From IMG/VR virus record IMGVR_UViG_3300017917_003822, positions 1 through 64,000 of that record: 64,000 bases of DNA. One strand, written 5' to 3'. Every line of letters starts with the position of its first letter. Position 1 is the stretch's first letter. A model generated the notes under the pieces. The model searched no databases and was not told the DNA's origin. It saw only the letters and a list, made by a program, of their open reading frames with translations. Made by a program: the position numbers and the translations under genes. Of the stretch, positions 13,924 through 54,632 are shown piece by piece.

Positions 13924-13931
13924 GATATATA
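13924..13931 (+). promoter_or_regulatory. Late promoter motif GATATATA (tail sheath)
   Basis: Intergenic exact copy. Confidence 0.75.
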
Positions 13932-16900: not shown

Positions 16901-17314
16901 CCTATTATAAAGAGAAGAGGAGTTGGTGTGGTTATATTTGGTAACCAAACTGCTTATCAGCAAGTTAACTCAGCATTCAATCTAGTTCACGTAAGAGACC
17001 TTTTAATTAGTATAGAAAGCGACGTACAGGAGATTTTATCTAATTATCTATTTGATTTCAATGACGACTCGATCAGACTTGAAATTAAAACTCTAGTTGA
17101 TAACTATTTAGATGGTGTAAGAGCAGGAGGTGGTATTTATGCTTACCAGACTATTATGGATGCATCTAACAATACTCCAGCTATTATAGATATGAATATG
17201 GGTATAATCGACGTTATCATCGAACCTGCTAGAGGAATCCAGAAATTCATCAATAGAATCACTGTTACTAGAACAGGTGGAATCGCAGCGGGTGGATTTG
17301 TACAGTTTGTATAA
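13961..17314 (+). CDS. gp18: Tail sheath protein with a large G/T/S-rich insertion
   Basis: SGVYTLEFD, GPFNTPV, PPAAYV, INPI...VIFGNQT, VRDLLI, NNTPAIID. Confidence 0.95.
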   Translation: MANKVKIDYSQFRASGVYTLEFDASQNVILTSQTIRLVVGFSNRGPFNTPVYIPDVTTLISIFGDIDRSLENKGSFFQRSILTCLNTGPVFALNLLRLNDDEESADPDRVTYQSYSVDTEEANGVVTNRLYSSYYNKERFWFADPNYFLATLSVADQGKLFNLTNLGKSPMSIIVRKSTDSSRPLRGYDIFAIDWYGADNVPSFMHPYDYISDYFIDVIAVFGDWTNYQALAIDPKWSTYFTNNGFIKSRIDQFLADPDVSIVTSVTGCIIPDFVDLNGVNQYIQTLINNGTPSTGLFCAIDEQAFDDICQNPSKIDLVGNHLIDELSGDRDLATPRINFLSYDQVLVADYLYSQNVVGVTGATGFNSATGATVYTTGAKVGTLFTLTGSAGTTAGVAYQSFEAYNPNAYDGGLHYLQTSGTYGTTAGYMQNTADVNELKTFLSVTSSDDQKFILGVVSGYTGGLTGSLINQFAEADIVKLKVTGTREIGGALRIFFTHPLDTSFYRSQGITVTPTYNLTSYNTGASGSNQPFYTDSYQFGNSDYLDITSVSTPNGVTGPGAPLGVSNVIVAYNASDLYQDNKYSEINDGDLAWTDSTGTQVRYLGFEETVDRDQFNLVYTRAFSNVDRDDATITNIPAFGTTYASDNIGYPVDAQNFDIVSQEGSINQFVDCTRIDVTTFTVGLDSNGNVPFSVGDLVVSTDLDICDPATGNRQNRLAKITSVSRTTTAGLYRVVSARPVLYYSTANGVRVQKFLSIAQFTRSFDFTYLSGFTMTDWHRPNGSDARISEILDVMYNTNVAKTLASKDVISFRYIVDTFSGQILPNSKYQLSRLAKLRQQALAIINAPSMAQFRSSTDPRFTDAPTASNPYPKLNTAYIAEGGNLSLNPSYTFSLPTEEDGSKFCGFYSPYITVRESNRNIDVPPAAYVSNNFLRKFANGEPYAIIAGQKRGVISGSNVVGVEYDFTDEDRGNLEPFGINPIIKRRGVGVVIFGNQTAYQQVNSAFNLVHVRDLLISIESDVQEILSNYLFDFNDDSIRLEIKTLVDNYLDGVRAGGGIYAYQTIMDASNNTPAIIDMNMGIIDVIIEPARGIQKFINRITVTRTGGIAAGGFVQFV

Positions 17315-19884: not shown

Positions 19885-21387
19885 ATGGCCATAGATCAGA
19901 AACTTATATCCTCTCTATTAGATTTATCTAGAAACGTAGATAAACTCTCCGGTGACATTAAAAAGAATACGGAGACGACAACCGAACTTGTAGCTACGCA
20001 AGAAAAAAGTGTAGATAGTAACAAGGAAATCGGGAAAGTAGCTGAAAGTATAAAGGGTCTGGATTTAAAAAGTTTAAAGGGGGATTTCTCTGAATTAACT
20101 AAAAGCATCAGTGGACTTGATTTTAAGAATCTTTCCACTGATCTTAAATCATTAGACTTTAAGGGACTTTCAAATAGCATCAAATCGCTGGATCTTAAAA
20201 GCGTAACTAGCGATCTTAAAAATTTAGACTTCAAGAATCTATCTAATACAATCAAGGATTTTGATGTAAAAAACATAGCTAGCACGATAAAGGACCAGGG
20301 AATAAAAAACGTAGTCTCTGGATCTGTTGGGGGATTATTGAAAAAAGGTAAGGGTATACTTGGTTCCTTTGCTGATGGCGGAGATGTTAACAAGACTGGT
20401 AACTATCTTGTTGGTGAAAAGGGACCGGAAGTAGTTAAGTTAAATGCAGGATCTGTCGTTATACCCAATAATATTTTAAAAGAAAGGCAGGATATTTTAA
20501 AAAAATTAGGAGCTGACGCTCCTAGCGAAAAGGAAATATCAAGAAAAAGAAATGAATTACTCCTAAGTGATCCTGATTATTATTCGGATGAACCTGGTTG
20601 GTTGGAGGAGGACATTAATTCATATCTGGAGGGTCTTCAGGGAAAATCAACATCACTATTCACCCCGGAGGATTTAAAGAAGCTAAGCAAACCAGTGGAT
20701 AATAAAGCTGAAGCCTTGGTAAATCCTTTATCGACCCCAGCAAAAAATGACAAGAAAGAAAAAAATAAGAAGGACGAACCCAAATTAAAGGAAAAGAAGG
20801 ACGGACTATTTTCTAAAATTTTTGGTAAGAGTGATAAGAGTGAAATTAAAGGATCTGAGATTGTATCTAATACACCATCTAAGGATAAAGTTTTTGATAA
20901 GAATAGCATATTGACTCAGGGATCTAGTTTACTGAAAGGTGCCAGCGGTCTTTTGAATAATGAATTTGGTGGGAAGCTGAATATGGCGGGTGATATACTA
21001 AGTAAAGGAACAGAACTGGGCAAAAAAATAAAAATGCCTTCAATCGAGACCAGAACTCCTGAATTAAAAACTCCGGAAATTAAAACTGACATAAAGAAAC
21101 TTTCACCCCAACCCCAACCTAAGCCATCCAAGGTTGCTGAAACTAAAAATGAATCCCAATCTCAGGAAGTTCTTAAAAATGAAATAATTGAAACAGGTTC
21201 AGCTAAATCTGAAGCTAAAACTCCTGAATCTACAAATTCTAATCAGCAAGGAACCAATCCAACAATGACGTCCAAGGATATTGAGGAAATGAAAGCTGCA
21301 CTAGTTAGAATAGCTTCGCTGTTGGAGGGCCCGTTGAATGTTGCTCCTATGGAGAGACCATTTAGACCCGATTCAAGAAGAATATAA
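19885..21387 (+). CDS. Tape measure / baseplate hub protein (putative)
   Basis: Position after the chaperones; 12-aa LDFKxLSxxxKS repeats; FADGG...LVGEKGPEVV motif common in tape measure proteins. Confidence 0.6.
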   Translation: MAIDQKLISSLLDLSRNVDKLSGDIKKNTETTTELVATQEKSVDSNKEIGKVAESIKGLDLKSLKGDFSELTKSISGLDFKNLSTDLKSLDFKGLSNSIKSLDLKSVTSDLKNLDFKNLSNTIKDFDVKNIASTIKDQGIKNVVSGSVGGLLKKGKGILGSFADGGDVNKTGNYLVGEKGPEVVKLNAGSVVIPNNILKERQDILKKLGADAPSEKEISRKRNELLLSDPDYYSDEPGWLEEDINSYLEGLQGKSTSLFTPEDLKKLSKPVDNKAEALVNPLSTPAKNDKKEKNKKDEPKLKEKKDGLFSKIFGKSDKSEIKGSEIVSNTPSKDKVFDKNSILTQGSSLLKGASGLLNNEFGGKLNMAGDILSKGTELGKKIKMPSIETRTPELKTPEIKTDIKKLSPQPQPKPSKVAETKNESQSQEVLKNEIIETGSAKSEAKTPESTNSNQQGTNPTMTSKDIEEMKAALVRIASLLEGPLNVAPMERPFRPDSRRI

Positions 21388-21427
21388 AAAATTCAGTTTA
21401 ATATTTTTTTATTTCGTACTTTTGTAT

Positions 21428-21435
21428 TACATTTG
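21428..21435 (+). promoter_or_regulatory. Bacteroidota-type housekeeping promoter -7 element (TACATTTG)
   Basis: Matches TAnnTTTG; same element at 35230 and 54658, variant at 41715. Confidence 0.65.
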
Positions 21436-21446
21436 TGGATAATCAA

Positions 21447-22037
21447 ATGGAAGAGAGCTTTATGATACAAACCTACGAAGAATACCCAGATCTGTCATTC
21501 ATGACTGACGAATTTATATCCCTTCCGTTCTGGAGAGTTAGAAAAAAAGAAAATGGGACTTTCGAGGTTTCCAGCTTTCCAAAAAAAATTAAAAATTTAA
21601 ATATAGGTATCGAAAATAGAGATACCATATATTTAGAGATGGCATCTGTTTGGTCCAAGAATTCATATTGTAGTCGAATGAAGGTGGGATGTCTTATAGT
21701 TAAGAACAAATCCATCATATCTGACGGATACAATGGTTCTCCAACCGGATTCCCAAATATTTGTGAAAGTGAAGATAATGTAACCTTACCATACGTTCTC
21801 CATGCGGAGGCAAATGCAATCACTAAGTTGGCAAAGGGAACCCAGAGTTCCGATGGATCTACTCTCTATGTAACTCTGTCCCCGTGCTTTGAGTGCTCAA
21901 AACTAATAATACAATCCGGTATAAAAAGAGTTATTTTTTCTGAGGTTTACAGAAAACCTGAATCCCTGTCTTTCCTGGTCGAGGGAGGAGTAGAAATTAT
22001 AAGATTCTCGAATAACCAAGATAAAACCCAAATTTAA
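21447..22037 (+). CDS. dCMP deaminase
   Basis: HAEANAI and SPCFEC zinc motifs, DGYNG. The GTG at 21435 overlaps the promoter, so ATG 21447 or 21462 is preferred. Confidence 0.92.
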   Translation: MEESFMIQTYEEYPDLSFMTDEFISLPFWRVRKKENGTFEVSSFPKKIKNLNIGIENRDTIYLEMASVWSKNSYCSRMKVGCLIVKNKSIISDGYNGSPTGFPNICESEDNVTLPYVLHAEANAITKLAKGTQSSDGSTLYVTLSPCFECSKLIIQSGIKRVIFSEVYRKPESLSFLVEGGVEIIRFSNNQDKTQI

Positions 22038-22040
22038 TAT

Positions 22041-22649
22041 ATGCAACAAAAAGAAAAAAACATTCAGAAGATCGCGGAGGATTTTATCACTCTAAAGAAT
22101 GACAAAAATTTTAAAATTTTATTTGAGAGACTTAGACCAGGTATATTGAACCACTGCTTTCTTATTCTTAAAGAACAGGAACTTGCTGAGGATGCATTCA
22201 TAAATACTATGTCAAAGATATGGTTGAAAATAGACCAGTATAACGATGAGAGAGGAAATTTTTCAACTTGGTGTTATAACATAGCAAGAAATGAATCTTT
22301 GCTTCTAATGAAATCTAGAAAAAGATATCACAGTCACACGGACAGTGAACTTGAATTTCTTTCCTCGCAAAACACAATCGGTGATTCTGTTCAGTATTAT
22401 ACGATAGACGACGACCCAACTTATGCTTTCTACAATGAGGGTTCAGATTTGGATGTGGTGTATGAGTCAGTACTGGATGAAATTAGAGAATTACCCGAAT
22501 TATATAGGGATATTATGATCGATAGGGAAATCAATCATATGAAATATAAGGACATAGCGGAAAAATATGGAATCAAGAAAAGATCCATAGCAACCAGAAT
22601 TCGTAGAGCTAGAGGTAAAATAAGAAAAAAAATAGACGGGAAACAATAA
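22041..22649 (+). CDS. ECF-type sigma-70 factor
   Basis: Region 2 AEDAFINTMSKIW...FSTWCYNIARN; region 4 LPELYR...MKYKDIAEKYGI...TRIRRAR. Confidence 0.9.
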   Translation: MQQKEKNIQKIAEDFITLKNDKNFKILFERLRPGILNHCFLILKEQELAEDAFINTMSKIWLKIDQYNDERGNFSTWCYNIARNESLLLMKSRKRYHSHTDSELEFLSSQNTIGDSVQYYTIDDDPTYAFYNEGSDLDVVYESVLDEIRELPELYRDIMIDREINHMKYKDIAEKYGIKKRSIATRIRRARGKIRKKIDGKQ

Positions 22650-22666
22650 TTGTTCCTAGTGCTATA
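22640..22666 (+). promoter_or_regulatory. ECF-like promoter GAAAC-N17-CTATA
   Basis: Same spacing at 6241, 23943, 36589 and 60040, and at 29421 with GAAAT. Confidence 0.65.
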
Positions 22667-22681
22667 AAAAATAAAAAATCT

Positions 22682-23125
22682 ATGCTTAGATTATTTAAAG
22701 TTATAAAAGAGATATCACTTTATCGTGAATATGTCAGAATTATAAAAAAAGAAGAGACAGATTCCCCAATTTGGGCAAGAAGAAATCTTCGTAGGGATTA
22801 TCTTAACCGAATCTATACCGTGGTAAATTTACCCCCTCAGGTACTTTTATCTGTCGATTTACCTAGAGATGCAAGACCTTCGTTCGTTATCAGCGAACTT
22901 AAGCCAACTAATGAATATTTCAAATCACTTAACCTTGAAGAACTCTTAACCATGTGGATAGAGCCTGTTAAAGGGACTGATGAGGAATCATATCTTGCTG
23001 TTTATCAGTTTCTGTTCAGACATCTAAGTTGGTTATGGATTCTAAGATTTTTAATTGAAATCTCCTTAATTACTTTTATTATTATTAAATGGGATTGGGT
23101 TTTAAATCTATTTAACTTAGCATAA
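22682..23125 (+). CDS. Hypothetical protein with C-terminal transmembrane helix
   Basis: Hydrophobic C-terminus WLWILRFLIEISLITFIIIKW. Confidence 0.65.
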   Translation: MLRLFKVIKEISLYREYVRIIKKEETDSPIWARRNLRRDYLNRIYTVVNLPPQVLLSVDLPRDARPSFVISELKPTNEYFKSLNLEELLTMWIEPVKGTDEESYLAVYQFLFRHLSWLWILRFLIEISLITFIIIKWDWVLNLFNLA

Positions 23126-23943
23126 TGAGGCCGGAAATACTAGCTCTCAAGAACGAAATAGAAAAAAAATTAGAATTCTTTACTAATGACAATAAATTCT
23201 CATTTGATGAAGAATCTCATACCTATAGATATGGTGGAATAAAATACGATTCTGTTACCACTTTTCTAAAGACATTTAAGGTACCTTTTGATAGGGAATA
23301 TTGGTCGAAGAGAAAAGCACAGGAAGCTGGAGTTGACGTTTCTATCATACTTAATGAATGGCAGAATAAAGCTAACGTAGCTAATGATCTTGGTACCAGG
23401 GTCCATAAATTCATAGAGGATTTTTGGAGCGGACTAAATCCGGAAATACCTGAATTTGATCCAGACGATGAGTATTCAAAGAGAGTTCATAAATTTATTG
23501 ACCTGTATAAGAGAAAACTTCACGTTTTCGTTCCATTAAAATCTGAACTTAGAATATTTTGTAAAAAGTGGAGACTTGCAGGTACTATAGACCAACCTCT
23601 TCTTTTCTGGGACGAGAAAAGACAGAAAGTTTTTTTAATAATAGGAGACTGGAAAACTAACGGAGATTTTAAGCATGATGATCATCCTAAGGGTAGATAT
23701 AAAAAACTTCTTAGACCATTTTCTCATCTATGGGAAAACCAGCATAACGAGTATTCCATACAAATAAGTCTATATAGATTGATGTTAGAAGAGGAGGTTG
23801 GAATTGAAACAGAGAGTGGATTTCTTTGTCATATAGGACCTGACGAATTACCAAAATTATATCCAGCAAAAGATCTGAGAGAACCCCTAAGAGCCTATTT
23901 GGATCAGAATAGAATTAGTTTTGATATTTTTGATCTTAGATAG
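23125..23943 (+). CDS. PD-(D/E)XK exonuclease
   Basis: FDEESHTY, SVTT, GTRVH, AGTID, IGDWKT, YSIQISLY. Confidence 0.85.
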   Translation: MRPEILALKNEIEKKLEFFTNDNKFSFDEESHTYRYGGIKYDSVTTFLKTFKVPFDREYWSKRKAQEAGVDVSIILNEWQNKANVANDLGTRVHKFIEDFWSGLNPEIPEFDPDDEYSKRVHKFIDLYKRKLHVFVPLKSELRIFCKKWRLAGTIDQPLLFWDEKRQKVFLIIGDWKTNGDFKHDDHPKGRYKKLLRPFSHLWENQHNEYSIQISLYRLMLEEEVGIETESGFLCHIGPDELPKLYPAKDLREPLRAYLDQNRISFDIFDLR

Positions 23944-23987
23944 AAACAAAATACAACAAACCGACTAGAAAAATAAAAAAAGAAAAT

Positions 23988-24521
23988 ATGTCAACAAGTA
24001 AAAAACAAGAAAAATTAATTACATCAGAATCTCCTCTACCTGGAGGATCTAACGAAATTGATTTCAGTACGATGGGTCAGGATATGGGTATTTCGTACGA
24101 CCAGGAAAGAGTTGATGAAATCCAAAACGCAATTAATGCAAAGAAGGAAGAAATCAAATCTAAGGTTTATGCAGTATCATGTAACGATGAGCTTTTCGCA
24201 GAATATGAATCCTTCATGGTAAATAAAGCGGAATGGAATTCAACTGAAGCCCTTGGTGTCGTGGAAGTTAATAGAAACATCAGAAAAATCAAAAAGGAGG
24301 GAATCAAGGATAATACTATCTATATGGGGGCACTTCCATTAGAGGCTAGTCATTATTTTCTTTCTAAATCCAAAGGAACTGGACTTAAGAGTGCAGAAGA
24401 TTTTATTAAGCTATTTAAAGCTTTCGATCAGGCTTTATCCGATGCAAAAGAGGATGCTGCACAAATAAAAGAAATGGAAAAACAATTAGCTGCAGCAATG
24501 CAGGGTATCTCTTTAGGATAA
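23988..24521 (+). CDS. Hypothetical protein
   Basis: 177-aa ORF with its own ECF-like promoter (23943) and a downstream terminator. Confidence 0.7.
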   Translation: MSTSKKQEKLITSESPLPGGSNEIDFSTMGQDMGISYDQERVDEIQNAINAKKEEIKSKVYAVSCNDELFAEYESFMVNKAEWNSTEALGVVEVNRNIRKIKKEGIKDNTIYMGALPLEASHYFLSKSKGTGLKSAEDFIKLFKAFDQALSDAKEDAAQIKEMEKQLAAAMQGISLG

Positions 24522-24540
24522 ACTAAAAAAATAATACTCA

Positions 24541-24571
24541 AAAAACCAGCTTTATCATGCTGGTTTTTTTT
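24541..24571 (+). terminator. Intrinsic terminator
   Basis: AAAAACCAGC-TTTATCAT-GCTGGTTTTTTTT. Confidence 0.85.
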
Positions 24572-24618
24572 GTGAGAACTCTTTTTGGATATATAAAAAA
24601 ATAAAAACACTTTAGATT

Positions 24619-24921
24619 ATGAAACTATTAGAAAAAATCAAAGGTAATTTTGAAATTATCGTGTTATGCTTACTAGCAGTTATTTTTATTAGACAGTGCG
24701 GTGCAAATCGTGACATCGATAAATTAGCAAAACAATCAAAAATTCAAACATCAATTCTTGATTCTATTTCTTCTAAGGAGGAATTGAGAATTCTTTTGGA
24801 AATTGAAGGACTAAAATCCGAGAAAAGAATGATCCAATCAACGGATAGAAGAATATTGGATGTTAATCGTCAGACCGAAATTGATGAAGAAATAAAAAAA
24901 TTAGAGAAATCTAAAAAATAA
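24619..24921 (+). CDS. Membrane-anchored coiled-coil protein
   Basis: N-terminal hydrophobic helix ending RQC, followed by a coiled coil. Confidence 0.65.
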   Translation: MKLLEKIKGNFEIIVLCLLAVIFIRQCGANRDIDKLAKQSKIQTSILDSISSKEELRILLEIEGLKSEKRMIQSTDRRILDVNRQTEIDEEIKKLEKSKK

Positions 24922-24927
24922 TCGACG

Positions 24928-25566
24928 ATGAGTAAAAAGGCTGTTAGTTATTTCATTATAGGGACTTTCGTCAGTCTATATTTAATGGTTTCGGTAATTT
25001 CTACTATCCACGTTATAGACTTCTTTAAGATCTCAAATCCAACCTGGCTTGCTGTTAGCTTAGCAATAGCTTTTGAAATAGGTGCTGCTGCTTCGTTAGC
25101 TTCTCTGATCTCACTAGATAAAATGAATAAGGGAATGGTATGGGGACTTTTTATAATATTGACTCTCATGCAAGCGATGGGTAATACATATTATGCATAC
25201 ACACATCTCGAAAACTATCAGGGGTGGATAGAGCTTTTTGGATTATCTGAGGAGGACGTCATATACCAGAAAAGAATGCTTTCTATTATAAGTGGTGCGG
25301 TTTTACCTGTTGTTGCCCTTGGATTCATTAAATCCCTGGTTGATTATATAAAACCTGATGAAACTAAGGAGACTCTTCCCGAGCAACCTGTAGATGCTAA
25401 TGCTGAAATGGCGACAGATACTCCTTTTATCAAGGATGAATCTGGTGATACTATTATAGATCTAGCATCTTCGGATAATATGATACCTTCGGACTACGTG
25501 GATGAACTGATGACTCCAGCAAACAAAAACAGGGTTTCGCTTGAAATTGACCCGACAAAACTTTAA
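24928..25566 (+). CDS. Multi-pass membrane protein (about 4 TM)
   Basis: Four hydrophobic segments and an acidic C-terminal tail. Confidence 0.7.
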   Translation: MSKKAVSYFIIGTFVSLYLMVSVISTIHVIDFFKISNPTWLAVSLAIAFEIGAAASLASLISLDKMNKGMVWGLFIILTLMQAMGNTYYAYTHLENYQGWIELFGLSEEDVIYQKRMLSIISGAVLPVVALGFIKSLVDYIKPDETKETLPEQPVDANAEMATDTPFIKDESGDTIIDLASSDNMIPSDYVDELMTPANKNRVSLEIDPTKL

Positions 25567-25581
25567 AAATAATTAATAAAA

Positions 25582-26256
25582 GTGACAGATTCTGAAACAG
25601 TAAACAATGATAATTTTGATGGAGGTACATCGAGTCAGGTGGGAGACATAAACCTGATTGGAGGTAATTCGGAATTTGCAATATCTCCATCAGGAGCTAC
25701 GGCTGGATTTGATATTAAATATAAGAATATAGCCGAAACCATGCCTGATCTGGAGATAATCGAAGCTACTTTTCAGAGGTTCAATGATCCAAATGAGGTT
25801 GAATTTATAAAGGAATCTTTTGAGGTTGTATACCAGGATAAGACATTAGATAAACTGGATGTTGTTGATTTCTTCCATCCTCTCCAAAGTTTTTCTAACT
25901 ATCAAAAACAAACTTTCGTTATTCTTCCTCAAACATCAGCTAATTTGGACCCTTCGTCATTCACGAGTACCAACGGTGAAGTTTCTATGCTGATAGCTAA
26001 AGCGGAATACCTTCCTGGTACCCCCATTGAGGAAAAGATTATTTTTTGGGATTATAAGGGTAATCAGAGAAATATAATGGGAGAAATAATGATTTTAACC
26101 GGTGCAATAAAGGAGAATCTTTCTTGGAAGGGATGGGACGTTGACCCTTTTTCGACATATGGACACACAGGACCTGCTAATTCGGCCAACGGAGGATTTA
26201 TATTCACGAATCCAACAGATTCGGAGGTACAATTAACAGTAATAACAGCAAATTAA
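25582..26256 (+). CDS. Putative structural protein (paralog of 26258..26755)
   Basis: Shares WxYKGN...MGExMxLxG...GW...GGxxFxNP with the next gene. Confidence 0.65.
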   Translation: MTDSETVNNDNFDGGTSSQVGDINLIGGNSEFAISPSGATAGFDIKYKNIAETMPDLEIIEATFQRFNDPNEVEFIKESFEVVYQDKTLDKLDVVDFFHPLQSFSNYQKQTFVILPQTSANLDPSSFTSTNGEVSMLIAKAEYLPGTPIEEKIIFWDYKGNQRNIMGEIMILTGAIKENLSWKGWDVDPFSTYGHTGPANSANGGFIFTNPTDSEVQLTVITAN

Positions 26257-26257
26257 T

Positions 26258-26755
26258 ATGGCAACTCAACCGATAACCTGTCCTTATGATGTACTTGAAG
26301 GATTTAGATTTTATAGAGGTGATTTAGTACTAGATAACGGCTTAACTAACAATCCACCGAAATATCTCTCTCTTAAGGATCTCAATATACCCGTTGATAA
26401 ATTCTCCAGAAGTAGAGTTACTCTTAAACCCGGAGGATATTCTCTTCTGAGTCAAACTGATATTGGTGACGAATATGGGTATGTTTCTTTTATAGCTGTG
26501 AAAGCGATATATCCCACTTCAACAGTGGAGTCAAGAAAATATATAAACTGGACATACAAGGGAAACACTAACTATATGGGGGAACTTATGGTTCTTTCTG
26601 GACAGAGAACATCTTCTACTGATTCAGAATTCGAGGGTTGGAATCTATCAAAACCTGGCACTATTCCCGAGAATGATCCAGGAAACGGTGGTATAGTTTT
26701 TTATAACCCTAGCACTGAAACCACAGTTAAGTTAGAAATATTGGTGTGTGGGTGA
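26258..26755 (+). CDS. Putative structural protein (paralog of 25582..26256)
   Basis: Shares WxYKGN...MGExMxLxG...GW...GGxxFxNP with the previous gene. Confidence 0.65.
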   Translation: MATQPITCPYDVLEGFRFYRGDLVLDNGLTNNPPKYLSLKDLNIPVDKFSRSRVTLKPGGYSLLSQTDIGDEYGYVSFIAVKAIYPTSTVESRKYINWTYKGNTNYMGELMVLSGQRTSSTDSEFEGWNLSKPGTIPENDPGNGGIVFYNPSTETTVKLEILVCG

Positions 26756-26808
26756 TAAAATGTGACAATAACATTAAATATATACTAAAAGTTTCTTGTC
26801 CTTAGTTG

Positions 26809-26816
26809 GATATATA
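26809..26816 (+). promoter_or_regulatory. Late promoter motif GATATATA
   Basis: Intergenic exact copy. Confidence 0.72.
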
Positions 26817-26841
26817 ATAAACAGTAAAAAAAAAGTAAACC

Positions 26842-29220
26842 ATGGACTTTATAAACCAAGTTAAAAATTTAAAAGAACTAACAAAATCACCAGAGGTAAG
26901 AGCTTTGTGTGAAAGCTTCCTTAGAGGTGAATCTGTTTCTAAGGATCAATTGATAGCTTCTATCAACGAACATAACGATTCAGAGACGATACAAATCAAT
27001 GAAACTCCAAGCATTACTAATCACATGGATGCTATAAGGAGAGAGGAGACCGAGGTTTCTAAGAAAACCGCTGCTGCTCTTATGGAGTCTTGGGGAGGAT
27101 TGGGATCAAGAACATCTTCTAACTCAGGATCTTACTTAAATAAATCGGAGGAGATTGAGAAAAAATCAGAAACCCTTTTTGAGAATATCTCAAAGGTAGC
27201 TTCATCAGACCCAGCTACTATCTCTTTTATGGATTCACAGAGTATAAAAAATCTTGGAGTTATTGAAGCGATTTCTAAATTGAAGGAATCATCAATTTAC
27301 ACATACCCAAAAGCTAAAATCGTTTGTGAGCAATATCAGAATCTTATCGTAAATAAGAGATTGCCTGAATTTGCAGTTATAAACAATTTTATAGCTGAAT
27401 TGGAATCTTTCAGCTGGGACAACACTGTTACCCCTATAGCTGATGATCTTAAATCCAAAGCTAAGAAATATTCAAGAGAGATAGAAGTTGCTAAAGTGTT
27501 GGAATCTATTAAGGGTAGTGGTAGTTCTTCTTTCTATTCTGAACTTTCTGAAACTTTAAATTCTTGGTTGGTTTCTGAGAGTAAGTCAAATGGTCTTTTA
27601 GTTAAAAATATTTCTAAATACAGCTTTAACCCAGTAGTCAGAAATCTTATAAACTTTTTAAATGTTCATGAGAGCAATGACACAAGAAAATTAGAAATCC
27701 CAGTAAATGCTCAGGGTGAATCTAGTGTATCTAAAGTATATTCTCCGGTTTTATTTGAGAACGGAAGAACTTTTTTCTATATAGGTGAATCTGTATTTGA
27801 AGCAACCGAGGATGAGCTTGTTAAACTTACCGAAAGCCAGCTATCTTCTCTTCCTGCTGATTATATTAAATTGGTTGAAGTTTCTAAGAAACCTCATGTT
27901 GCTATCAACGAGAATGGTATTTCAATCAAATTTGGTAAGAAAATAGTTAGATTGATCGAAGAGAATGAAAAAGTTGAAGTTTACTTAGGTAAAGATAAAC
28001 TTAAATTTGGTGAAGTTTCAGGACTTGCTAAAATATTAGGATTAGAGTCTGGCTCTTATTTCGGTGTTAATGAATCTGAAGTTGTTAATGACACTCTGGT
28101 TCTTTACACGAACTATTCTAACATAGTAGAATTAGATTTTGCTAAAAACATTTCTTCCAACATATATGAGGGAGTTTGTGTTAATCTATTCAAATGGAAC
28201 AATCAAATTTATGTTCAGAAGATTAACCAAACAATGAATGAAAATTCTATATTCAAGGTAAATGGAACACAGGCGGTATCTATGGTTAAATCTTATTTAA
28301 GATATGATATTTCCGAAGGTTTAACTGAATTTCTTGAGGGTGAGAATAAAATTAAATCTGTCATGATAAATGACAGAAATAAAGTTCTGGAAAATATCAC
28401 TAAGGTTGAGAATGAAATTCTTAAATTGAATTCATTGATGGAATCAACTCCTCTTTATAGAGAATCTAAAGAAATTTTATCTGCTAAATCTATTCTTGAA
28501 AAAGAACTATTAGTACTAAGAGAAAAATGGAATCAGATTAATTCTGAGCTTTCTAAGATTGATGAAGAGATTAAAATCGCATCTTTAATTAATATCTCGG
28601 AGGATGAGAAATTTAATATTGGTGATTTTATTAAAGTTAAGGAATCTGGAGAAACCGGAAAAATCATATCAGTAGACGGAACATCAGGAAGATACACTGT
28701 TCTTTTAGATAGCGGAAAGACCTCGGATTTCTTAGTTAACGAGATTTCTGATCTTGAGGAGGCACTAAGTCAGGCAGCTGAAAAAAATGCTGAAGATGCT
28801 GAAGATGAAGGACAAGAAGAAGTTAAAGAATCTAATAACTTGAACAAGTCTGATTTAAGTATCGAAGAACAAAAAAATCTTTTAAAAACTTTTGCTGAGG
28901 GACACGGATTTTCTAAAGCCCCAAAAGGAGAGGGTGATTCTATAGAAATGGGATTAGATTCTTTACATGGCTATAATATCACAATGAATGAAGGAAAGGA
29001 TAAAAAAGAGGAAGGGGATTTAGCAAAAGCTCCAGGTAACAACAAGAAGGAAAAAGGTAAAGTTGAAGGTGAAGATCTTTTAGCTGACGCTCCTGAAACT
29101 AAGGATAAGACTGAATTTGATGCTGAGGATGCTGATGGAGAAAAATATGAAATTGGTTACAATCTTAGAGAGGGTAACGAAGAAGGATTAGACGAATCTG
29201 AGGTTTTAAAAAAAAAGTAA
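26842..29220 (+). CDS. Large late protein, probably head-associated; KOW/SH3-like module, acidic tail; -1 frame extension to 29381
   Basis: Late promoter at 26809; many I/L-x-E sites; FNIGDFIKVKESGETGKIISVD; ends in an A9 run before TAA. Confidence 0.7.
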   Translation: MDFINQVKNLKELTKSPEVRALCESFLRGESVSKDQLIASINEHNDSETIQINETPSITNHMDAIRREETEVSKKTAAALMESWGGLGSRTSSNSGSYLNKSEEIEKKSETLFENISKVASSDPATISFMDSQSIKNLGVIEAISKLKESSIYTYPKAKIVCEQYQNLIVNKRLPEFAVINNFIAELESFSWDNTVTPIADDLKSKAKKYSREIEVAKVLESIKGSGSSSFYSELSETLNSWLVSESKSNGLLVKNISKYSFNPVVRNLINFLNVHESNDTRKLEIPVNAQGESSVSKVYSPVLFENGRTFFYIGESVFEATEDELVKLTESQLSSLPADYIKLVEVSKKPHVAINENGISIKFGKKIVRLIEENEKVEVYLGKDKLKFGEVSGLAKILGLESGSYFGVNESEVVNDTLVLYTNYSNIVELDFAKNISSNIYEGVCVNLFKWNNQIYVQKINQTMNENSIFKVNGTQAVSMVKSYLRYDISEGLTEFLEGENKIKSVMINDRNKVLENITKVENEILKLNSLMESTPLYRESKEILSAKSILEKELLVLREKWNQINSELSKIDEEIKIASLINISEDEKFNIGDFIKVKESGETGKIISVDGTSGRYTVLLDSGKTSDFLVNEISDLEEALSQAAEKNAEDAEDEGQEEVKESNNLNKSDLSIEEQKNLLKTFAEGHGFSKAPKGEGDSIEMGLDSLHGYNITMNEGKDKKEEGDLAKAPGNNKKEKGKVEGEDLLADAPETKDKTEFDAEDADGEKYEIGYNLREGNEEGLDESEVLKKK

Positions 29221-29381
29221 GTCGTAATTTCTACTTCGCGCCACAAGCAGAAGATCAGAATAAACCGGGTGAACCTTTTGTACAATCGTCCGAGGGTAAG
29301 TTAAGTAAAGCACCTGATGGAAAGAATATAATAGATAAGGATAACGAAGATAACGAAGAATCTGAAGAATCTAAGGAATAA
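29208..29381 (+). other. A9 / A_AAA_AAG slippery site and 54-codon -1 frame extension
   Basis: The -1 frame reads VSRNFYFAP...LSKAPDGK...EESKE* (TAA 29379-29381), ending just before the terminator. Confidence 0.6.
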
Positions 29382-29384
29382 GAC

Positions 29385-29418
29385 AAAAGAATGTAGCTAT
29401 ACGCTACATTCTTTTTTT
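29385..29418 (+). terminator. Intrinsic terminator
   Basis: AAAAGAATGTAGC-TATAC-GCTACATTCTTTTTTT. Confidence 0.85.
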
Positions 29419-29420
29419 AT

Positions 29421-29448
29421 GAAATCTTTCCCTATTTTTTGACTAAAA
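29421..29448 (+). promoter_or_regulatory. ECF-like promoter GAAAT-N17-CTAAAA upstream of the late sigma gene
   Basis: Same 17-nt spacing as the other copies. Confidence 0.6.
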
Positions 29449-29486
29449 TATAGACCCGAATTAAACAAATTAAACTCAAACTATTA

Positions 29487-29846
29487 ATGACAAAAATTTA
29501 TGTAAAGAATAGCGAGCTCATGGCAGCAGTTATAGAATCAAAGAATGCTGGAAAATTAACACCTGAGACCATAGAGATGTTCAATCTTATGATAGAGGGA
29601 ATATCTAAAAAAATGTCATATAAGGATCCTGAGGATAAAGAGGATTGCATGGCTTTTGCTATGGAGGACTTATGTAAATATTGGAATAGATTCAATCCTG
29701 AAAAATCAAACAATCCGTTTGCGTATTTCACTCAGATTGCAAAGAATGGTTTTGCTAAAGGTTGGAAAAAACTACATCCGCCAAAAAATCCTAAAACTAT
29801 ACCCTTTAGTTATATTACAGGGGAGGATAACTCATATAACGTATAA
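29487..29846 (+). CDS. gp55: Late-transcription sigma factor (T4 gp55-like)
   Basis: YVKNSEL, FNPEKSNNPFAYFTQIAKNGF. Confidence 0.88.
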   Translation: MTKIYVKNSELMAAVIESKNAGKLTPETIEMFNLMIEGISKKMSYKDPEDKEDCMAFAMEDLCKYWNRFNPEKSNNPFAYFTQIAKNGFAKGWKKLHPPKNPKTIPFSYITGEDNSYNV

Positions 29847-29855
29847 TTATTGATT

Positions 29856-30341
29856 ATGACTGATATAAAAAAAGTAAAACCGAACGGTGAATACAGATCT
29901 GGAAAATATGAACCAAAAAATCCGGAGAAATATATCGGTGATATCCATAATATAATTTTCAGATCTTCCTGGGAATATAGATTTTGCACATATTGTGACA
30001 CTAATGATTCCATACTAAAATGGAGTTCAGAACCTTTGTCCATAGATTATTATAATCCATTGGATAAAAAAACACACAAGTATAATGTTGATTTTTATAT
30101 GAAGGTGCTGAAAGAAAGCGGGGAAACCCAGGAATGGATTATCGAGATAAAACCAGAAAACCAAACTAAGAAGCCTATTTATGAGGGAACTATGACCGTA
30201 GCCAAACTTAAATCATATAATAGAAACATGCAGATTTGGATTACAAATCAGGCCAAATTCAAAGCTGCCAAAGAATGGGCGGAAAAAAGAGGTTATAGAT
30301 TCGGTGTGATCGATGAGAATTTTTTATTTAAAAGCAAGTAA
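29856..30341 (+). CDS. gp4: Head completion nuclease (T4 gp4-like, TnsA fold)
   Basis: PKNPEKYIGD, FRSSWE, WSSE, IEIKP, NQAKFKAA. Confidence 0.9.
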   Translation: MTDIKKVKPNGEYRSGKYEPKNPEKYIGDIHNIIFRSSWEYRFCTYCDTNDSILKWSSEPLSIDYYNPLDKKTHKYNVDFYMKVLKESGETQEWIIEIKPENQTKKPIYEGTMTVAKLKSYNRNMQIWITNQAKFKAAKEWAEKRGYRFGVIDENFLFKSK

Positions 30342-30943
30342 TGTATAACGATCTAGTTCTCCAGTATAAAGAATCCTTAAATAAATCGGATGACATTTTT
30401 TCAGCAACTGATGATTTTTTTTTAAAAAAATATTTTAAAAATGAATCAGTGGAGAGAAAATTTACTCCTCCTTTTGTACCAGGAGAGATTTACACTTTCC
30501 TATACCAAACGGATTCCGAGGTAAATGAGAAAAGACCCTTTATAGATAGAATGCCTTTGATTATATGTACAGATACGTTTAATACAAAGGAATCAGGTAC
30601 GATAATTAAGGGAATAGATCTAATAACAGTGCCACCGAGAATCAGGATTGATATCATCGGAAAAATCTATGACAATTTTAGCGAGCAGATAAAGTCCAAT
30701 GACTCATCATATACTAAAGGAGGAGCTAAATCGCCAATAAATTTGAAGGATCAGGTATTAAAAGTTTTGCTAAATAATACTGGTTATGTGAATTCTCTCT
30801 TCGGATTTAAGTACAAGTTTATAAGATCTCCCAAAGTTATATCCTCCGATGACTGGGCAAAGATACCATATTTGAGAGTAAATTTTATAGAGGGCTTACC
30901 TATACAATCGATATATAATGAATATCAATCGAAATTAATTTAG
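30341..30943 (+). CDS. DNA end protector protein (T4 gp2-like)
   Basis: PGEIYTFLY, DRMPLI, GIDLITVPP; adjacent to gp4. Confidence 0.7.
   Translation: MYNDLVLQYKESLNKSDDIFSATDDFFLKKYFKNESVERKFTPPFVPGEIYTFLYQTDSEVNEKRPFIDRMPLIICTDTFNTKESGTIIKGIDLITVPPRIRIDIIGKIYDNFSEQIKSNDSSYTKGGAKSPINLKDQVLKVLLNNTGYVNSLFGFKYKFIRSPKVISSDDWAKIPYLRVNFIEGLPIQSIYNEYQSKLI
30910..30917 (+). promoter_or_regulatory. Late promoter motif GATATATA (portal genes)
   Basis: Exact copy in the 3' end of the gp2-like gene, about 60 nt before portal 1. Confidence 0.65.
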
Positions 30944-30976
30944 TTTTTTCGATAAAATGAATAAAGTATTTAATAA

Positions 30977-34224: not shown

Positions 34225-35199
34225 ATGAAATTTGATTTTTCAAGATTATTTTCTAAAAGTAAAATACTCGTAATTGGCGATGTTATGCTGGATCATTATG
34301 TTCTTGGTTCAGTTTCGAGAATTTCGCCAGAAGCACCAGTTCCTGTTCTAGTTAGGGAATCTGAGAGTCATTATTTGGGTGGTGCAGGTAACGTTTTTTC
34401 TAATATACATTCTCTAGGTGGGAATGGTGATATAATTTCCGTGATTGGAGACGATTTTAATGGTGAATATATCGAGAAAATGATTTTTGATAAATCCACA
34501 TTAAGTGTTCTTATTAAGGATAAAACAAGAAAAACCACCATAAAATCCAGATACATCGGAAATTCTCATCAATTACTTAGGGTTGATGACGAGGATTGTC
34601 TGGACATTAATCAGGAAATCCAATTACATTTTATGGAGAGACTTAATGCAATCATAGACTTCTACGATTGTGTTATTATGGAAGATTATAATAAGGGACT
34701 TTTAACCCCCGAAATAATAAAAAATGTTGTTAATCTATGTAGATCGAAGGGAAAGAAACTTATAGTTGATCCTAAAATAAGAAACGTTGATTTCTATAAG
34801 GGTTGCTCCGTTCTTAAACCTAATTTTTCGGAATTTTGTATTCTTGCAAATAAGAAGATGAACGTTTCAGATTTTGATTTAATAATAGAGGAGGCCAGAA
34901 AGATTATAAAAAAAATGGATCTCGAGTCTATCTTGGTAACTTTGTCTGATTCTGGAATCCTCTATGTTAGCAAATACGAATCGTACCACAGTCCGGGTTA
35001 TCCAATAAAAGTATCCGATGTTTCCGGAGCTGGCGACACAGTCACCGCTATGTTCTCCCTGTGCTGGTCGTCCGGTGTCGATTTAAAAGAGACTTTGGAT
35101 CTTTGCAATGTAGCAGGATCTATAGCTTGTTCGTTTGTTGGTGCTGTTTCCGTAAACATAGAAGATGTAATTAACAGCGAACATCTAAAAAATCTGTAG
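34225..35199 (+). CDS. rfaE1: D-glycero-D-manno-heptose-7-phosphate kinase (HldE/RfaE domain I, PfkB family)
   Basis: VIGDVMLDHY, RISPEAPVPV, GGAGNV, LLRVD, DYNKG, VDPK, DVSGAGDT. Confidence 0.92.
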   Translation: MKFDFSRLFSKSKILVIGDVMLDHYVLGSVSRISPEAPVPVLVRESESHYLGGAGNVFSNIHSLGGNGDIISVIGDDFNGEYIEKMIFDKSTLSVLIKDKTRKTTIKSRYIGNSHQLLRVDDEDCLDINQEIQLHFMERLNAIIDFYDCVIMEDYNKGLLTPEIIKNVVNLCRSKGKKLIVDPKIRNVDFYKGCSVLKPNFSEFCILANKKMNVSDFDLIIEEARKIIKKMDLESILVTLSDSGILYVSKYESYHSPGYPIKVSDVSGAGDTVTAMFSLCWSSGVDLKETLDLCNVAGSIACSFVGAVSVNIEDVINSEHLKNL

Positions 35200-35229
35200 T
35201 TAATATTTTTTCTGTCCGGGTTTCTTTAT

Positions 35230-35237
35230 TATATTTG
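35230..35237 (+). promoter_or_regulatory. Bacteroidota-type -7 promoter element (TATATTTG)
   Basis: TAnnTTTG about 20 nt upstream of the ligase ATG. Confidence 0.65.
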
Positions 35238-35256
35238 TGGAAATTAAAAAACAAAT

Positions 35257-36588: not shown

Positions 36589-36616
36589 GAAACAAGCTTC
36601 TGAATATCAACTAGAA
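36589..36616 (+). promoter_or_regulatory. ECF-like promoter GAAAC-N17-CTAGAA
   Basis: Upstream of the clamp loader operon. Confidence 0.65.
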
Positions 36617-41690: not shown

Positions 41691-41739
41691 TTTTTATTTT
41701 CCGACTTTCTCGATTATATTTACAGAAAAATAAATAAGC

Positions 41740-45976: not shown

Positions 45977-45984
45977 GATATATA
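45977..45984 (+). promoter_or_regulatory. Late promoter motif GATATATA (protease-capsid operon)
   Basis: Intergenic exact copy. Confidence 0.78.
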
Positions 45985-54604: not shown

Positions 54605-54632
54605 AAGGAGGGATCTAAGATCCCTCCTTTTT
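54605..54632 (+). terminator. Intrinsic terminator
   Basis: AAGGAGGGATCT-A-AGATCCCTCCTT followed by Ts. Confidence 0.85.

What the first reader, a model, noticed from the sequence alone, without database searches (positions are those of the whole stretch)
21428..29846. Three-tier sigma cascade readable from promoter motifs
Seen: (i) TAnnTTTG precedes the operon containing the ECF sigma gene; (ii) GAAA(C/T)-N17-CTANA precedes replication/accessory genes and the gp55-like gene (29421); (iii) GATATATA precedes structural operons. Known: T4 uses MotA/AsiA for middle transcription, and SPO1 uses a sigma cascade. Inference: this T4-like phage uses its own ECF sigma for middle transcription, wired host sigma -> ECF sigma -> gp55.
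Basis: partly seen in the sequence, partly recalled or inferred. Interest (0 to 1): 0.72.

Follow-up and report, generated by a model that had tools for sequence, protein, structure and literature searches.

The report
Three-promoter sigma cascade in jumbo phage
A 270-kb T4-related phage of Bacteroidota carries three sharply distinct, conserved promoter types wired so that the host sigma should switch on a phage ECF sigma, which should switch on a gp55-like late sigma; it looks like a fully sigma-based replacement for T4's MotA/AsiA step, but it has not been tested by experiment.

Summary
There are three promoter-like classes.

- Early (E): 27 sites, T-run + CCG, then 11 nt, then TAnnTTTG. One lies at 21393-21443, before the dCMP-deaminase/ECF-sigma operon.
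- Middle (M): GAAA(C/T)-N16/17-(C>G,A)TAnA. It is enriched upstream of genes only at these two spacers. It precedes the clamp loader, SSB, thymidylate synthase, exonuclease and the gp55-like gene (29421-29447).
- Late (L): GATATATA, with 41 of 48 copies within 80 nt upstream of a gene and no -35 box. It precedes sheath, portal, protease, terminase, fibre and endolysin genes.

The genome has exactly two sigma-like genes: an ECF type (sigma2 + sigma4, closest solved relative SigW) and a gp55-like one (region 2 only). I found no RNA polymerase, MotA or AsiA.

In 32-50 distinct relatives, each orthologous promoter keeps its class (88-100%; other classes 0-1, apart from the portal's extra M-like box) while spacers drift.

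Assigning each sigma to its promoter class is inference. No start-site or timing data could be obtained.

Verdict: a new variant of a known kind, combining an SPO1-style sigma cascade with T4-style late transcription. Interest is moderate to high.

The parts
21393..21443 (+). Early (E) promoter of the dCMP-deaminase/ECF-sigma operon: T-run and TCG at 21401-21416, 11-nt spacer, -7 box TACATTTG at 21428-21435
   Evidence: Weight-matrix score 35.9, one of 27 genome-wide sites scoring 30 or more. An E-type box is present upstream of the ortholog in 45 of 50 distinct relatives.
21447..22037 (+). dCMP deaminase gene, first gene of the early operon
   Evidence: PF00383 E 7e-25; phrog_174 E 6e-53.
22041..22649 (+). 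ECF-type sigma factor (202 aa, sigma2 + sigma4 only)
   Evidence: PF04542 + PF08281. TIGR02937 scores 70.4 bits, above its cut-off; best subfamily hits are Bacteroidetes ECF models. Closest solved relative is B. subtilis SigW (5WUQ, E 2e-8). It is the only region-4 sigma gene in the genome.
22640..22666 (+). Middle (M) promoter: GAAAC-N17-CTATA, overlapping the end of the sigma gene, 15 nt before the next ORF
   Evidence: An M box is present in 45 of 49 distinct relatives.
22682..23125 (+). 147-aa protein with a C-terminal hydrophobic helix; candidate anti-sigma or membrane protein, function unknown
   Evidence: Translation. No family hit. Syntenic in relatives. The complex prediction with the sigma gave no answer.
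23125..23943 (+). Exonuclease gene
   Evidence: phrog_298 E 2e-30.
23943..23969 (+). M promoter: GAAAC-N17-CTAGA, before the 177-aa ORF at 23988-24521
   Evidence: Present in 45 of 46 distinct relatives. The -35 and TA.A columns are about 90% or more conserved, while spacer columns are 30-70%.
24540..24571 (+). Hairpin with T-run (terminator-like) ending the middle unit
   Evidence: A hairpin with a T-run is kept at this position in relatives.
24588..24595 (+). Late (L) promoter box GATATATA, 23 nt before the 100-aa ORF at 24619-24921
   Evidence: Present in 37 of 38 distinct relatives.
26809..26816 (+). L promoter box GATATATA before the 792-aa ORF at 26842-29220; a second conserved AATATATA box lies at 26777-26784
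   Evidence: Present in 34 of 34 distinct relatives.
29389..29418 (+). Strong hairpin with a T7 run that insulates the gp55-like gene from the upstream late gene
   Evidence: Sequence; scan. A hairpin with a T-run stands immediately before the M box in nearly all relatives.
29421..29447 (+). M promoter of the gp55-like gene: GAAAT at 29421-29425, 17-nt spacer, CTAAA at 29443-29447
   Evidence: Among 34 distinct relatives, M is present in 30, E in 0 and L in 0. TGAAAT and the TA.A columns are about 90% or more conserved, while spacer columns are 40-70%.
29487..29846 (+). gp55-like late sigma (119 aa, region 2 only)
   Evidence: phrog_234 E 1.5e-15; PF04542 at 24.9 bits. The only PDB hit is T4 gp55 (7D7C chain F, E 7e-5). 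It is 81-95% identical in relatives.
29856..30943 (+). Head-closure (gp4-like) and DNA-end-protector (gp2-like) genes, directly downstream of the gp55-like gene
   Evidence: phrog_218 E 5e-47; phrog_429 E 4e-6.
30910..30956 (+). Tandem L box (30910-30917) and M-like box (GAAAT-N16-ATAAA, 30931-30956) before the portal gene at 30977-32572
   Evidence: Among 32 distinct relatives, L is present in 32 and the M-like box in 26. Portal: phrog_213 E 2e-55.
35195..35245 (+). E promoter before the ATP-dependent DNA ligase gene (35257-36588)
   Evidence: Matrix score 37.9; phrog_114 E 1e-77.
36589..36615 (+). M promoter (GAAAC-N17-CTAGA) before the clamp-loader gene (36622-37566)
   Evidence: phrog_168 E 6e-63.
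13924..13931 (+). L box before the tail sheath gene (13961-17314); example of a late structural operon
   Evidence: phrog_34521 E 3e-121.
45977..45984 (+). L box before the prohead protease gene (46011-47960), which is followed by the major head protein gene (47991-49709)
   Evidence: phrog_207 E 4e-37; phrog_138 E 1e-35.

Best explanation
The phage runs its whole programme on the host core RNA polymerase by changing the sigma subunit twice.

Step 1 (inferred). On entry, host sigma-A holoenzyme uses about 27 early promoters. These carry the Bacteroidota -7 box TAnnTTTG plus a phage-specific T-run/CCG module. They drive takeover and nucleotide-metabolism genes, including the dCMP-deaminase/ECF-sigma operon at 21447-22649.

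Step 2 (inferred). The phage ECF sigma has sigma2 and sigma4 domains, so it can read a two-box promoter. It directs core polymerase to about 20-30 middle promoters of the form GAAA(C/T)-N16/17-(C)TAnA. These sit before replication and accessory genes (clamp loader, SSB, thymidylate synthase, exonuclease, kinases, glycosyltransferases) and before the gp55-like gene. That gene is insulated from upstream late transcription by a terminator.

Step 3 (inferred). The gp55-like sigma has region 2 only, so it can read only a -10-type box. It directs polymerase to about 45-60 late promoters (GATATATA, no -35) before head, neck, tail, packaging and lysis genes.

Shown directly: the three motif classes, their positions, the functions of the downstream genes, the two sigma genes and their domain make-up, and conservation of class at orthologous sites.

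Inferred: which sigma reads which class, the temporal order, and that the boxes are promoters.
For: Motif statistics:
- E: 27 sites, with a clear gap in scores below them.
- M: enriched near gene starts only at spacers of 16 and 17; window count 10 against 2.7 expected.
- L: the most enriched 8-mer, 41 of 48 copies upstream of genes, with information content confined to the 8 bases.

Sigma genes:
- Exactly two sigma-like genes in a 99%-complete genome.
- ECF: sigma2 + sigma4, and above the TIGR02937 cut-off.
- Its nearest solved relative is SigW. SigW's published -35 is TGAAAC with -10 CGTA (PMC5758882).
- A phage ECF-like sigma that reads GTAAtg-N16-aCTA is experimentally established in phage 7-11 (PMC8948821).
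- gp55-like: phrog_234, and the only PDB hit is T4 gp55.

Gene functions by class:
- E: deaminase + ECF sigma, ligase, exonuclease, endonuclease, tRNA nucleotidyltransferase, and many unknowns.
- M: clamp loader, SSB, thymidylate synthase, exonuclease, gp55-like sigma.
- L: sheath, portal, protease, terminase, neck, fibre, endolysin, virion proteins.

Conservation in 80 syntenic loci from relatives:
- dcd: E in 45/50. p147: M in 45/49. p177: M in 45/46. p100: L in 37/38. p792: L in 34/34. gp55: M in 30/34.
- Other classes occur 0-1 times at each of these positions.
- Boxes are about 90% or more conserved while spacers are 30-70%.
- The sigma4 and sigma2 DNA-reading segments are invariant across the clade.

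Other evidence:
- The -7 box TAHHTTTG is the hallmark of Bacteroidota sigma-A (PMC6847099).
- No RNA polymerase, MotA or AsiA was detected.
- E. coli-type sigma-70 promoters are not enriched.
Against: - There is no transcript 5'-end or time-course evidence. The two RNA runs that hold this phage gave only a few short contigs.
- The sigma-to-class assignment rests on domain logic and analogy.
- There is no covariation test: both the sigma reading segments and the boxes are invariant in all relatives retrieved.
- More distant relatives (LR756500, Lak-B5, MA9V-2) show no obvious M box before their gp55 genes, and they carry other sigma genes.
- The ECF sigma is not autoregulated and has no proven anti-sigma, unlike typical ECF systems.
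- The portal gene has both L and M-like boxes.
- 71 of 160 intergenic gaps of 25 nt or more carry none of the three motifs.
- The T4 late co-factors are not clearly present: gp33 gives only a weak hit (E 0.015), and the gp45 N-domain was not found.
Confidence: 0.66

Rival explanations
1. The three motif classes are real promoters, but the M class is not read by the phage ECF sigma. It is read either by a host ECF sigma that the phage exploits, or by host sigma-A helped by an unrecognised phage activator (a MotA-like logic). The phage ECF sigma would then have another job, such as redirecting host genes.
For: - No experiment links the ECF sigma to the M boxes.
- The ECF's best subfamily matches are Bacteroidetes host-type ECF models, so a host paralog might share its specificity.
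- Many early genes have no known function and could encode activators.
- The ECF sigma is not autoregulated (0 of 50 relatives have an M box before the operon).
Against: - The M -10 box bears no resemblance to TAnnTTTG, so sigma-A is unlikely to open it.
- GAAAC-N16/17 with a CTA-type -10 is the standard ECF layout (PMC5758882, PMC8948821).
- There are three promoter classes, and exactly one two-domain and one single-domain phage sigma, so the assignment is the parsimonious one.
- The ECF gene, its DNA-reading segments and the M boxes are all strictly conserved together across the clade.
- No MotA or AsiA was found.
Confidence: 0.14
2. There is sigma switching but no strict three-step relay. 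M and L, or E and M, overlap broadly in time, and the ECF class is a 'delayed early/continuous' class rather than a discrete middle tier. Late onset would be set mainly by something else, such as replication coupling as in T4.
For: - Dual boxes exist: L plus M-like before the portal gene (26 of 32 relatives), and E+L, M+L and E+M pairs at a few genes.
- Nothing blocks read-through from the E promoter into the M-driven genes at 22682-24521, because no terminator lies between them.
- Late-function genes (head closure, end protector) sit directly behind gp55 in the M-driven unit.
Against: - The gp55 gene has only an M box and is insulated by a conserved terminator. Late sigma therefore cannot appear before the ECF sigma acts, which by itself imposes an order.
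- The functional split between M genes and L genes is clean for almost all annotated genes.
Confidence: 0.15
3. The motifs are not promoters at all. They would be other conserved intergenic signals, such as regulator binding sites, packaging or replication signals, or translation-related leaders.
For: No 5' ends are mapped. A-rich leaders are also strongly enriched upstream of genes.
Against: - All are strand-specific and sit about 5-80 nt upstream of starts (median 21-24 nt).
- One class contains the phylum's known -7 promoter box.
- One class has strict 16/17-nt two-box geometry.
- One class resembles the T4 late box in length, AT content and lack of a -35.
- They follow terminators, and they partition by gene function.
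Confidence: 0.03

Closest known systems
Bacillus phage SPO1 sigma cascade (host sigma-A, then gp28, then gp33/gp34)
   Same: Same logic: each temporal class has its own promoter type, and the sigma for the next class is encoded in the previous class. The host core polymerase is kept throughout. (PMC9429907 summarises the gp28 and gp34 roles.)
   Different: Different proteins and host phylum. Here the middle sigma is a canonical ECF type and the late sigma is a T4 gp55 homolog rather than the gp33/34 pair. Homology to gp28 or gp34 was not tested.
Phage T4 late transcription (gp55 + gp33 + gp45 clamp; late box TATAAATA)
   Same: A gp55 homolog is present (the only PDB hit is 7D7C gp55). The late promoter is a single AT-rich 8-bp box with no -35, about 20-30 nt before late genes. 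T4-type core genes are present: major head protein, portal, prohead protease, sheath, clamp loader, gp32-like SSB, and gp2- and gp4-like proteins.
   Different: - The box is GATATATA rather than TATAAATA.
- The sigma is only 119 aa, against 185 in T4.
- gp33 gives only a weak hit (E 0.015), and the gp45 N-domain was not detected.
- T4 makes gp55 from early/middle promoters that depend on sigma-70 with MotA/AsiA, whereas here its gene sits behind an ECF-style promoter.
Phage T4 middle transcription by sigma appropriation (MotA/AsiA)
   Same: It fills the same slot in the programme: switching on replication genes and the late sigma gene after the early phase.
   Different: No AsiA or MotA family match. 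No MotA-box-like motif. A separate sigma appears to replace the remodelling of host sigma.
phiEco32 gp36 and Salmonella phage 7-11 gp47 (phage-encoded ECF-like sigmas)
   Same: A phage-encoded group-4-like sigma redirects host core polymerase. The 7-11 gp47 promoters are bipartite, GTAAtg-N16-aCTA. They share the CTA -10 core and the spacing with the M class here (PMC8948821).
   Different: Those are small podoviruses of enterobacteria. Their sigma drives late (or middle plus late) genes and is the only phage sigma. Here the ECF sigma is an intermediate tier that feeds a second phage sigma. Sequence relatedness was not tested.
B. subtilis SigW and other cellular ECF sigmas
   Same: SigW is the closest solved relative (5WUQ, full-length alignment). 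The T-R-I-x-R recognition helix is shared. The SigW -35 TGAAAC and 16-17-nt spacing resemble the M class (PMC5758882).
   Different: The -10 is CTAnA rather than CGTA. There is no autoregulatory promoter and no proven anti-sigma. It is expressed from a sigma-A-type early phage promoter.
Group 2 jumbo phages with 'minimal' plus 'complete' sigma factors (Iyer et al. 2021, PMC7824862); possibly the aquatic 'moraphages' (PMC12619734)
   Same: These surveys already noted that T4-related jumbo phages lack their own polymerase and encode both a minimal sigma and a fuller sigma. They also noted that large freshwater phages of Flavobacteriia have a core sigma gene.
   Different: Those surveys describe no promoter classes, wiring or cascade. 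I did not test whether this genome belongs to the moraphage lineage.

Membership tests
ECF (group 4) sigma-70 family | Only sigma2 and sigma4 domains, about 200 aa, above the family model cut-off | tested here: met
   PF04542 + PF08281, 202 aa. TIGR02937 scores 70.4 bits against a cut-off of 42.9. Full-length alignment to SigW.
ECF (group 4) sigma-70 family | Target promoters with an AAC-containing -35 and a short -10 at 16-17 nt | tested here: inconclusive
   The M class has that form (GAAAC/T-N16/17-CTAnA). That this sigma reads it is inferred, not shown.
ECF (group 4) sigma-70 family | Positive autoregulation from its own promoter type (typical of the family, not universal) | tested here: not met
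   The operon has an E box, not an M box. 0 of 50 relatives have an M box upstream of the operon.
ECF (group 4) sigma-70 family | Co-located cognate anti-sigma factor (typical of the family, not universal) | tested here: inconclusive
   The next gene (22682-23125) encodes a 147-aa protein with a C-terminal TM helix and no family hit. The complex prediction gave 'no answer'.
T4-type late transcription system | gp55-family sigma with region 2 only | tested here: met
   phrog_234 E 1.5e-15. T4 gp55 (7D7C) is the only PDB hit, E 7e-5. No region 4.
T4-type late transcription system | Late promoter is a single 8-bp AT-rich box with no -35 element | tested here: met
   GATATATA; information content is confined to the 8 bases plus the weak flanking G/A. 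It precedes structural, packaging and lysis genes.
T4-type late transcription system | gp33 co-activator | tested here: inconclusive
   phrog_254, identified by scanning T4 gp33, gives one weak hit at 127744-127893 (E 0.015, 13.5 bits). That ORF has no Pfam hit.
T4-type late transcription system | gp45 sliding clamp as mobile activator, with clamp loader | tested here: inconclusive
   A clamp loader is present (phrog_168 E 6e-63). The gp45 N-domain PF02916 was not found; a diverged clamp could be missed.
T4 middle-mode sigma appropriation | AsiA and MotA proteins | tested here: not met
   PF09010 and PF09114 give no match even at E 10 or below.
Bacteroidota sigma-A promoters | -7 element TAnnTTTG (TAHHTTTG) | tested here: met
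   Most of the 27 E sites carry the exact box; five end in TTTA, TTAG or CTTG. The consensus is from PMC6847099.
Bacteroidota sigma-A promoters | -33 element TTTG about 19-21 nt upstream | tested here: not met
   There is no spacer-specific TTG/TTTG signal. Instead there is a T7 run plus CCG exactly 11 nt upstream of the box. The F. johnsoniae study also finds the -33 element weak (PMC6847099).
Phage sigma cascade (SPO1 type) | Each sigma gene lies behind the promoter type of the preceding tier | tested here: met
   E box before the ECF operon; M box, and only M, before gp55; conserved in relatives. The temporal order itself cannot be tested with these tools.

The most novel reading that the evidence does not exclude
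A very large, globally distributed clade of environmental jumbo phages of Bacteroidota has replaced the T4 MotA/AsiA middle step with its own ECF sigma. The clade comprises at least 549 protein clusters (at 90% identity) of this sigma, on contigs up to about 430 kb. This would give a complete host sigma-A -> ECF -> gp55 relay whose regulons can be read from sequence alone. It may include a membrane-anchored anti-sigma (p147) expressed from an ECF promoter, which would shut the middle tier off again.
Probability: 0.3. Interest if true: 0.72.

Novelty: new variant of a known kind. Interest (0 to 1): 0.6.

Why it matters
How T4-related phages that lack MotA/AsiA organise middle transcription is still poorly understood. 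This includes most of them, for example cyanophages and many jumbo phages.

Here the answer can be read from sequence. A second, ECF-type phage sigma has its own sharply defined promoter class, and the late sigma gene sits inside that regulon. If confirmed, this would provide:

- a sequence-only way to assign early, middle and late classes to hundreds of uncultured Bacteroidota jumbo phage genomes;
- three orthogonal promoter/sigma parts for Bacteroidota, a phylum whose promoters differ from the E. coli paradigm;
- a natural example of an ECF sigma used as a timer rather than a stress sensor.

Tried and rejected
1. Transcript evidence. Two RNA runs hold the phage, but only as a few 150-490-nt contigs. 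They gave no 5' ends and no operon boundaries.
2. Complex prediction of the ECF sigma with the N-terminal 108 aa of p147. The result was 'no answer', so it cannot be used either way.
3. Distant relatives as a test (LR756500, Lak-B5, Chryseobacterium phage MA9V-2). None has an obvious M box upstream of its gp55 homolog. MA9V-2 cannot serve as an 'ECF-less' negative control because it has another sigma gene, and LR756500 has four.
4. Walking outwards from the most divergent ECF ortholog (L079) found only itself. No covariation between sigma and box could therefore be tested.
5. One-position relaxations of the M boxes gave no spacer-specific excess, except G or A in place of C at the first -10 position.
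6. A search for a fourth motif in the 71 unexplained gaps found only A/T-rich leader words.
7. The textbook TTG/TTTG -33 at 10-29 nt from TAnnTTTG gave no signal.
8. The M match at 24889 was rejected as probably chance (8 of 43 relatives), and the matches at 21181 and 33289 as coding-region matches.
9. The E. coli-type sigma-70 scan was at chance level.
10. My unguided two-box enumeration was swamped by A/T-rich composition and did not recover M on its own.


Full report
**What the sequence is.** The window is the first 64 kb of a 270,629-bp viral record rated 99% complete. It is 36% G+C, with about 343 ORFs, 312 of them on the + strand, by my own simple ORF caller. T4-type core genes are present:
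- tail sheath, two portal paralogs and prohead protease;
- gp23-like major head protein and large terminase;
- gp4-like head closure, gp2-like end protector and a neck protein;
- clamp loader and gp32-like SSB.

The nearest database phages are uncultured huge phages, the Prevotella Lak megaphages and Chryseobacterium phages. 'T4-related jumbo phage of Bacteroidota' is therefore a fair description.

**The two sigma genes.** A six-frame search of the whole genome finds exactly two sigma region-2 matches and one region-4 match.
- The gene at 22041-22649 encodes a 202-aa protein with Sigma70_r2 and Sigma70_r4_2. It passes the ECF superfamily model TIGR02937 (70.4 bits, cut-off 42.9). Its best subfamily matches are Bacteroidetes ECF models, followed by SigW-like models. 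Its closest solved relative is B. subtilis SigW, aligned over its full length.
- The gene at 29487-29846 encodes a 119-aa protein that matches the 'late sigma' family phrog_234. Its only PDB match is T4 gp55.
- No multisubunit or T7-type RNA polymerase, AsiA or MotA was detected.

**Late motif.** GATATATA is the most enriched 8-mer upstream of genes. Of 48 copies, 41 lie within 80 nt of a same-strand start (p 4e-46). The window holds 15 copies, all on the + strand, against 5.9 expected.
- Alignment of 43 sites shows information only in the eight bases, with a weak G before, R after, and a preferred A five bases downstream. Nothing is conserved upstream.
- The median distance to the start codon is 21 nt.
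- Downstream genes with a known function are structural, packaging or lysis genes: neck/terminase operon, sheath, portal, protease/major head, tail fibre, virion proteins and endolysin.

**Middle motif.** The stronger test is the spacer control:
- Hits ending within 110 nt upstream of a gene number 14 of 25 at N17 and 6 of 14 at N16. They number 0-3 at every other spacer from 8 to 27.
- The -35 GAAA(C/T) tolerates no single change. The first base of the -10 may be C, G or A.
- About 26 matches have the -10 box in non-coding DNA.
- Downstream genes include the clamp loader, SSB, thymidylate synthase, exonuclease, a PfkB-type kinase, glycosyl- and methyltransferases, an RNA-binding protein and the gp55-like sigma.

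**Early motif.** TACATTTG at 21428 is real, but it is only the end of a 51-nt motif: (A/T)ATTTTTTTATnCCG, then 11 nt, then TA(Y)ATTTG.
- A weight matrix finds 27 sites scoring 30-48 bits, all on the + strand, and then nothing above 22 bits.
- They cluster between 180 and 264 kb among small genes of unknown function. They also precede the ligase, an exonuclease, an endonuclease, a tRNA nucleotidyltransferase and the deaminase/ECF operon.
- TAHHTTTG is the near-invariant -7 element of Bacteroidota sigma-A promoters (PMC6847099).
- The textbook -33 TTTG is absent. The function of the T-run/CCG module is unexplained.

**Wiring.** The ECF operon is preceded by an E site (21393-21443) and nothing else.

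The gp55-like gene is preceded by a 9-bp-stem hairpin with a T7 run (29389-29418), and immediately afterwards by the M site (29421-29447).

Two further M sites (22640 and 23943) and two L sites (24588 and 26809) lie inside the flagged interval. A terminator-like hairpin at 24540-24571 separates the M units from the L unit.

**Relatives.** A scan of IMG/VR with the ECF protein returned 197 relatives. The 80 loci kept are 62-91% identical and share the order deaminase, ECF, p147, exonuclease, p177, p100, p212, p224, p165, p792, gp55, head closure, end protector, portal. The protein database holds at least 549 clusters of this sigma.

The table shows how many distinct upstream sequences keep the expected class.

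| Gene | Expected class | Sequences keeping it |
|---|---|---|
| deaminase | E | 45/50 |
| p147 | M | 45/49 |
| p177 | M | 45/46 |
| p100 | L | 37/38 |
| p792 | L | 34/34 |
| gp55 | M | 30/34 |
| portal | L | 32/32 |

- Other classes occur 0-1 times at each of these positions. The exception is the portal, which has an extra conserved M-like box in 26 of 32 relatives.
- Box columns are about 90% or more conserved, while spacer columns fall to 30-70%. This is a classic footprint of selection on two boxes at fixed spacing.
- The sigma2 and sigma4 DNA-reading segments of the ECF protein are invariant across eleven diverse orthologs, while the linker varies.

**Mechanism.** The assignment of sigma to class is inference from three facts.
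- The class with the phylum-specific -7 box must belong to host sigma-A.
- A sigma with both sigma2 and sigma4 needs a two-box promoter. The M class has the canonical ECF form: an AAC-containing -35, a 16-17-nt spacer and a short -10. The SigW consensus is TGAAAC...CGTA (PMC5758882). [quoted passage not shown]
- A sigma with region 2 only can read only a -10-type box, as T4 gp55 does.

With three classes and exactly these two phage sigmas, the mapping is parsimonious. Because gp55 has only an M box behind a terminator, late transcription cannot begin before the ECF sigma has acted. This gives the order E, then M, then L.

**What weakens it.**
- No 5' ends or timing could be obtained.
- There is no covariation, because everything is conserved.
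- Distant relatives show no obvious M box.
- The ECF sigma lacks the family's usual autoregulation.
- The candidate anti-sigma, p147, is unproven.
- T4's gp33 and gp45 partners are not clearly found.
- Some genes carry two box types.
- 71 of 160 sizeable gaps have no recognised box.

**Comparison and novelty.** The logic is that of SPO1's sigma cascade. The late tier is T4-like, and the middle tier resembles the phage-encoded ECF-like sigmas of phiEco32 and 7-11.

Surveys have already noted that T4-related jumbo phages encode a minimal and a fuller sigma (PMC7824862). They have also noted that large freshwater phages of Flavobacteriia have a core sigma gene (PMC12619734).

My literature searches found no description of these promoter classes or of an ECF-to-gp55 relay. 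I therefore rate it a new variant of a known kind. It is well supported in silico and untested experimentally.

Noticed in passing
window 30977-32572 and 32577-34202: Two tandem portal-protein paralogs. Both match phrog_213 (E 2e-55 and 4e-65), and both are conserved in relatives.
   Followed up: partly
window 30910-30956: The portal gene has a late box followed 14 nt later by a middle-type box (GAAAT-N16-ATAAA). The second box is conserved in 26 of 32 relatives, so the portal may be made from both tiers.
   Followed up: partly
window 26777-26816: The 792-aa gene of unknown function has two late-type boxes (AATATATA and GATATATA). The 20-nt block around the upstream box is strongly conserved in relatives. 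The protein has no family match.
   Followed up: partly
window 21393-21416, 35195-35218, 41680-41703, 54623-54646 and 23 further sites genome-wide: Every early promoter carries a T7 run plus CCG exactly 11 nt upstream of TAnnTTTG, in place of the textbook -33 TTTG. What recognises it is unknown (host sigma-A region 4, an UP-like contact, or a phage factor).
   Followed up: partly
window 22682-23125: The 147-aa protein directly after the ECF sigma, behind a middle promoter, has a C-terminal transmembrane helix. It is a candidate anti-sigma that would give negative feedback. The complex prediction gave no answer.
   Followed up: partly
L091:13052-13525 (genome 157052-157525); L096:15116-15193 and 15951-16060: A phage-encoded tmRNA (Rfam RF00023, 59 bits, tag EVEYAVAA) and at least two tRNA genes. 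One tRNA gene is 110 nt long, possibly with an insertion. Further tRNA-like 3' ends are visible near 258-260 kb.
   Followed up: partly
window 21300-29900: At least 18 DNA metagenome runs hold 45-100% of this stretch's 31-mers. They come from pond, marine, freshwater, soil, wastewater, river and salt-marsh samples dated 2018-2025. One marine run differs at only about 0.5% of positions. This is an unusually cosmopolitan near-clonal phage.
   Followed up: no
L073, L078, L082 (upstream of the gp55 ortholog): In this divergent subclade, a hairpin with a T8 run lies between the middle-type box and the gp55 start codon. It could be an attenuator controlling late-sigma production.
   Followed up: no
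window 21435-21465: By the F. johnsoniae numbering, the early start site would fall near 21440. That leaves only a 7-nt leader before the ATG at 21447. An in-frame ATG at 21462 may be the real start of the deaminase.
   Followed up: no
L086 (MA9V-2 record 62440-62637) and LR756500 (four loci): More distant Bacteroidota jumbo phages also carry one to four extra sigma genes beside the gp55-like one. Multi-sigma programmes may therefore be general in this group.
   Followed up: no
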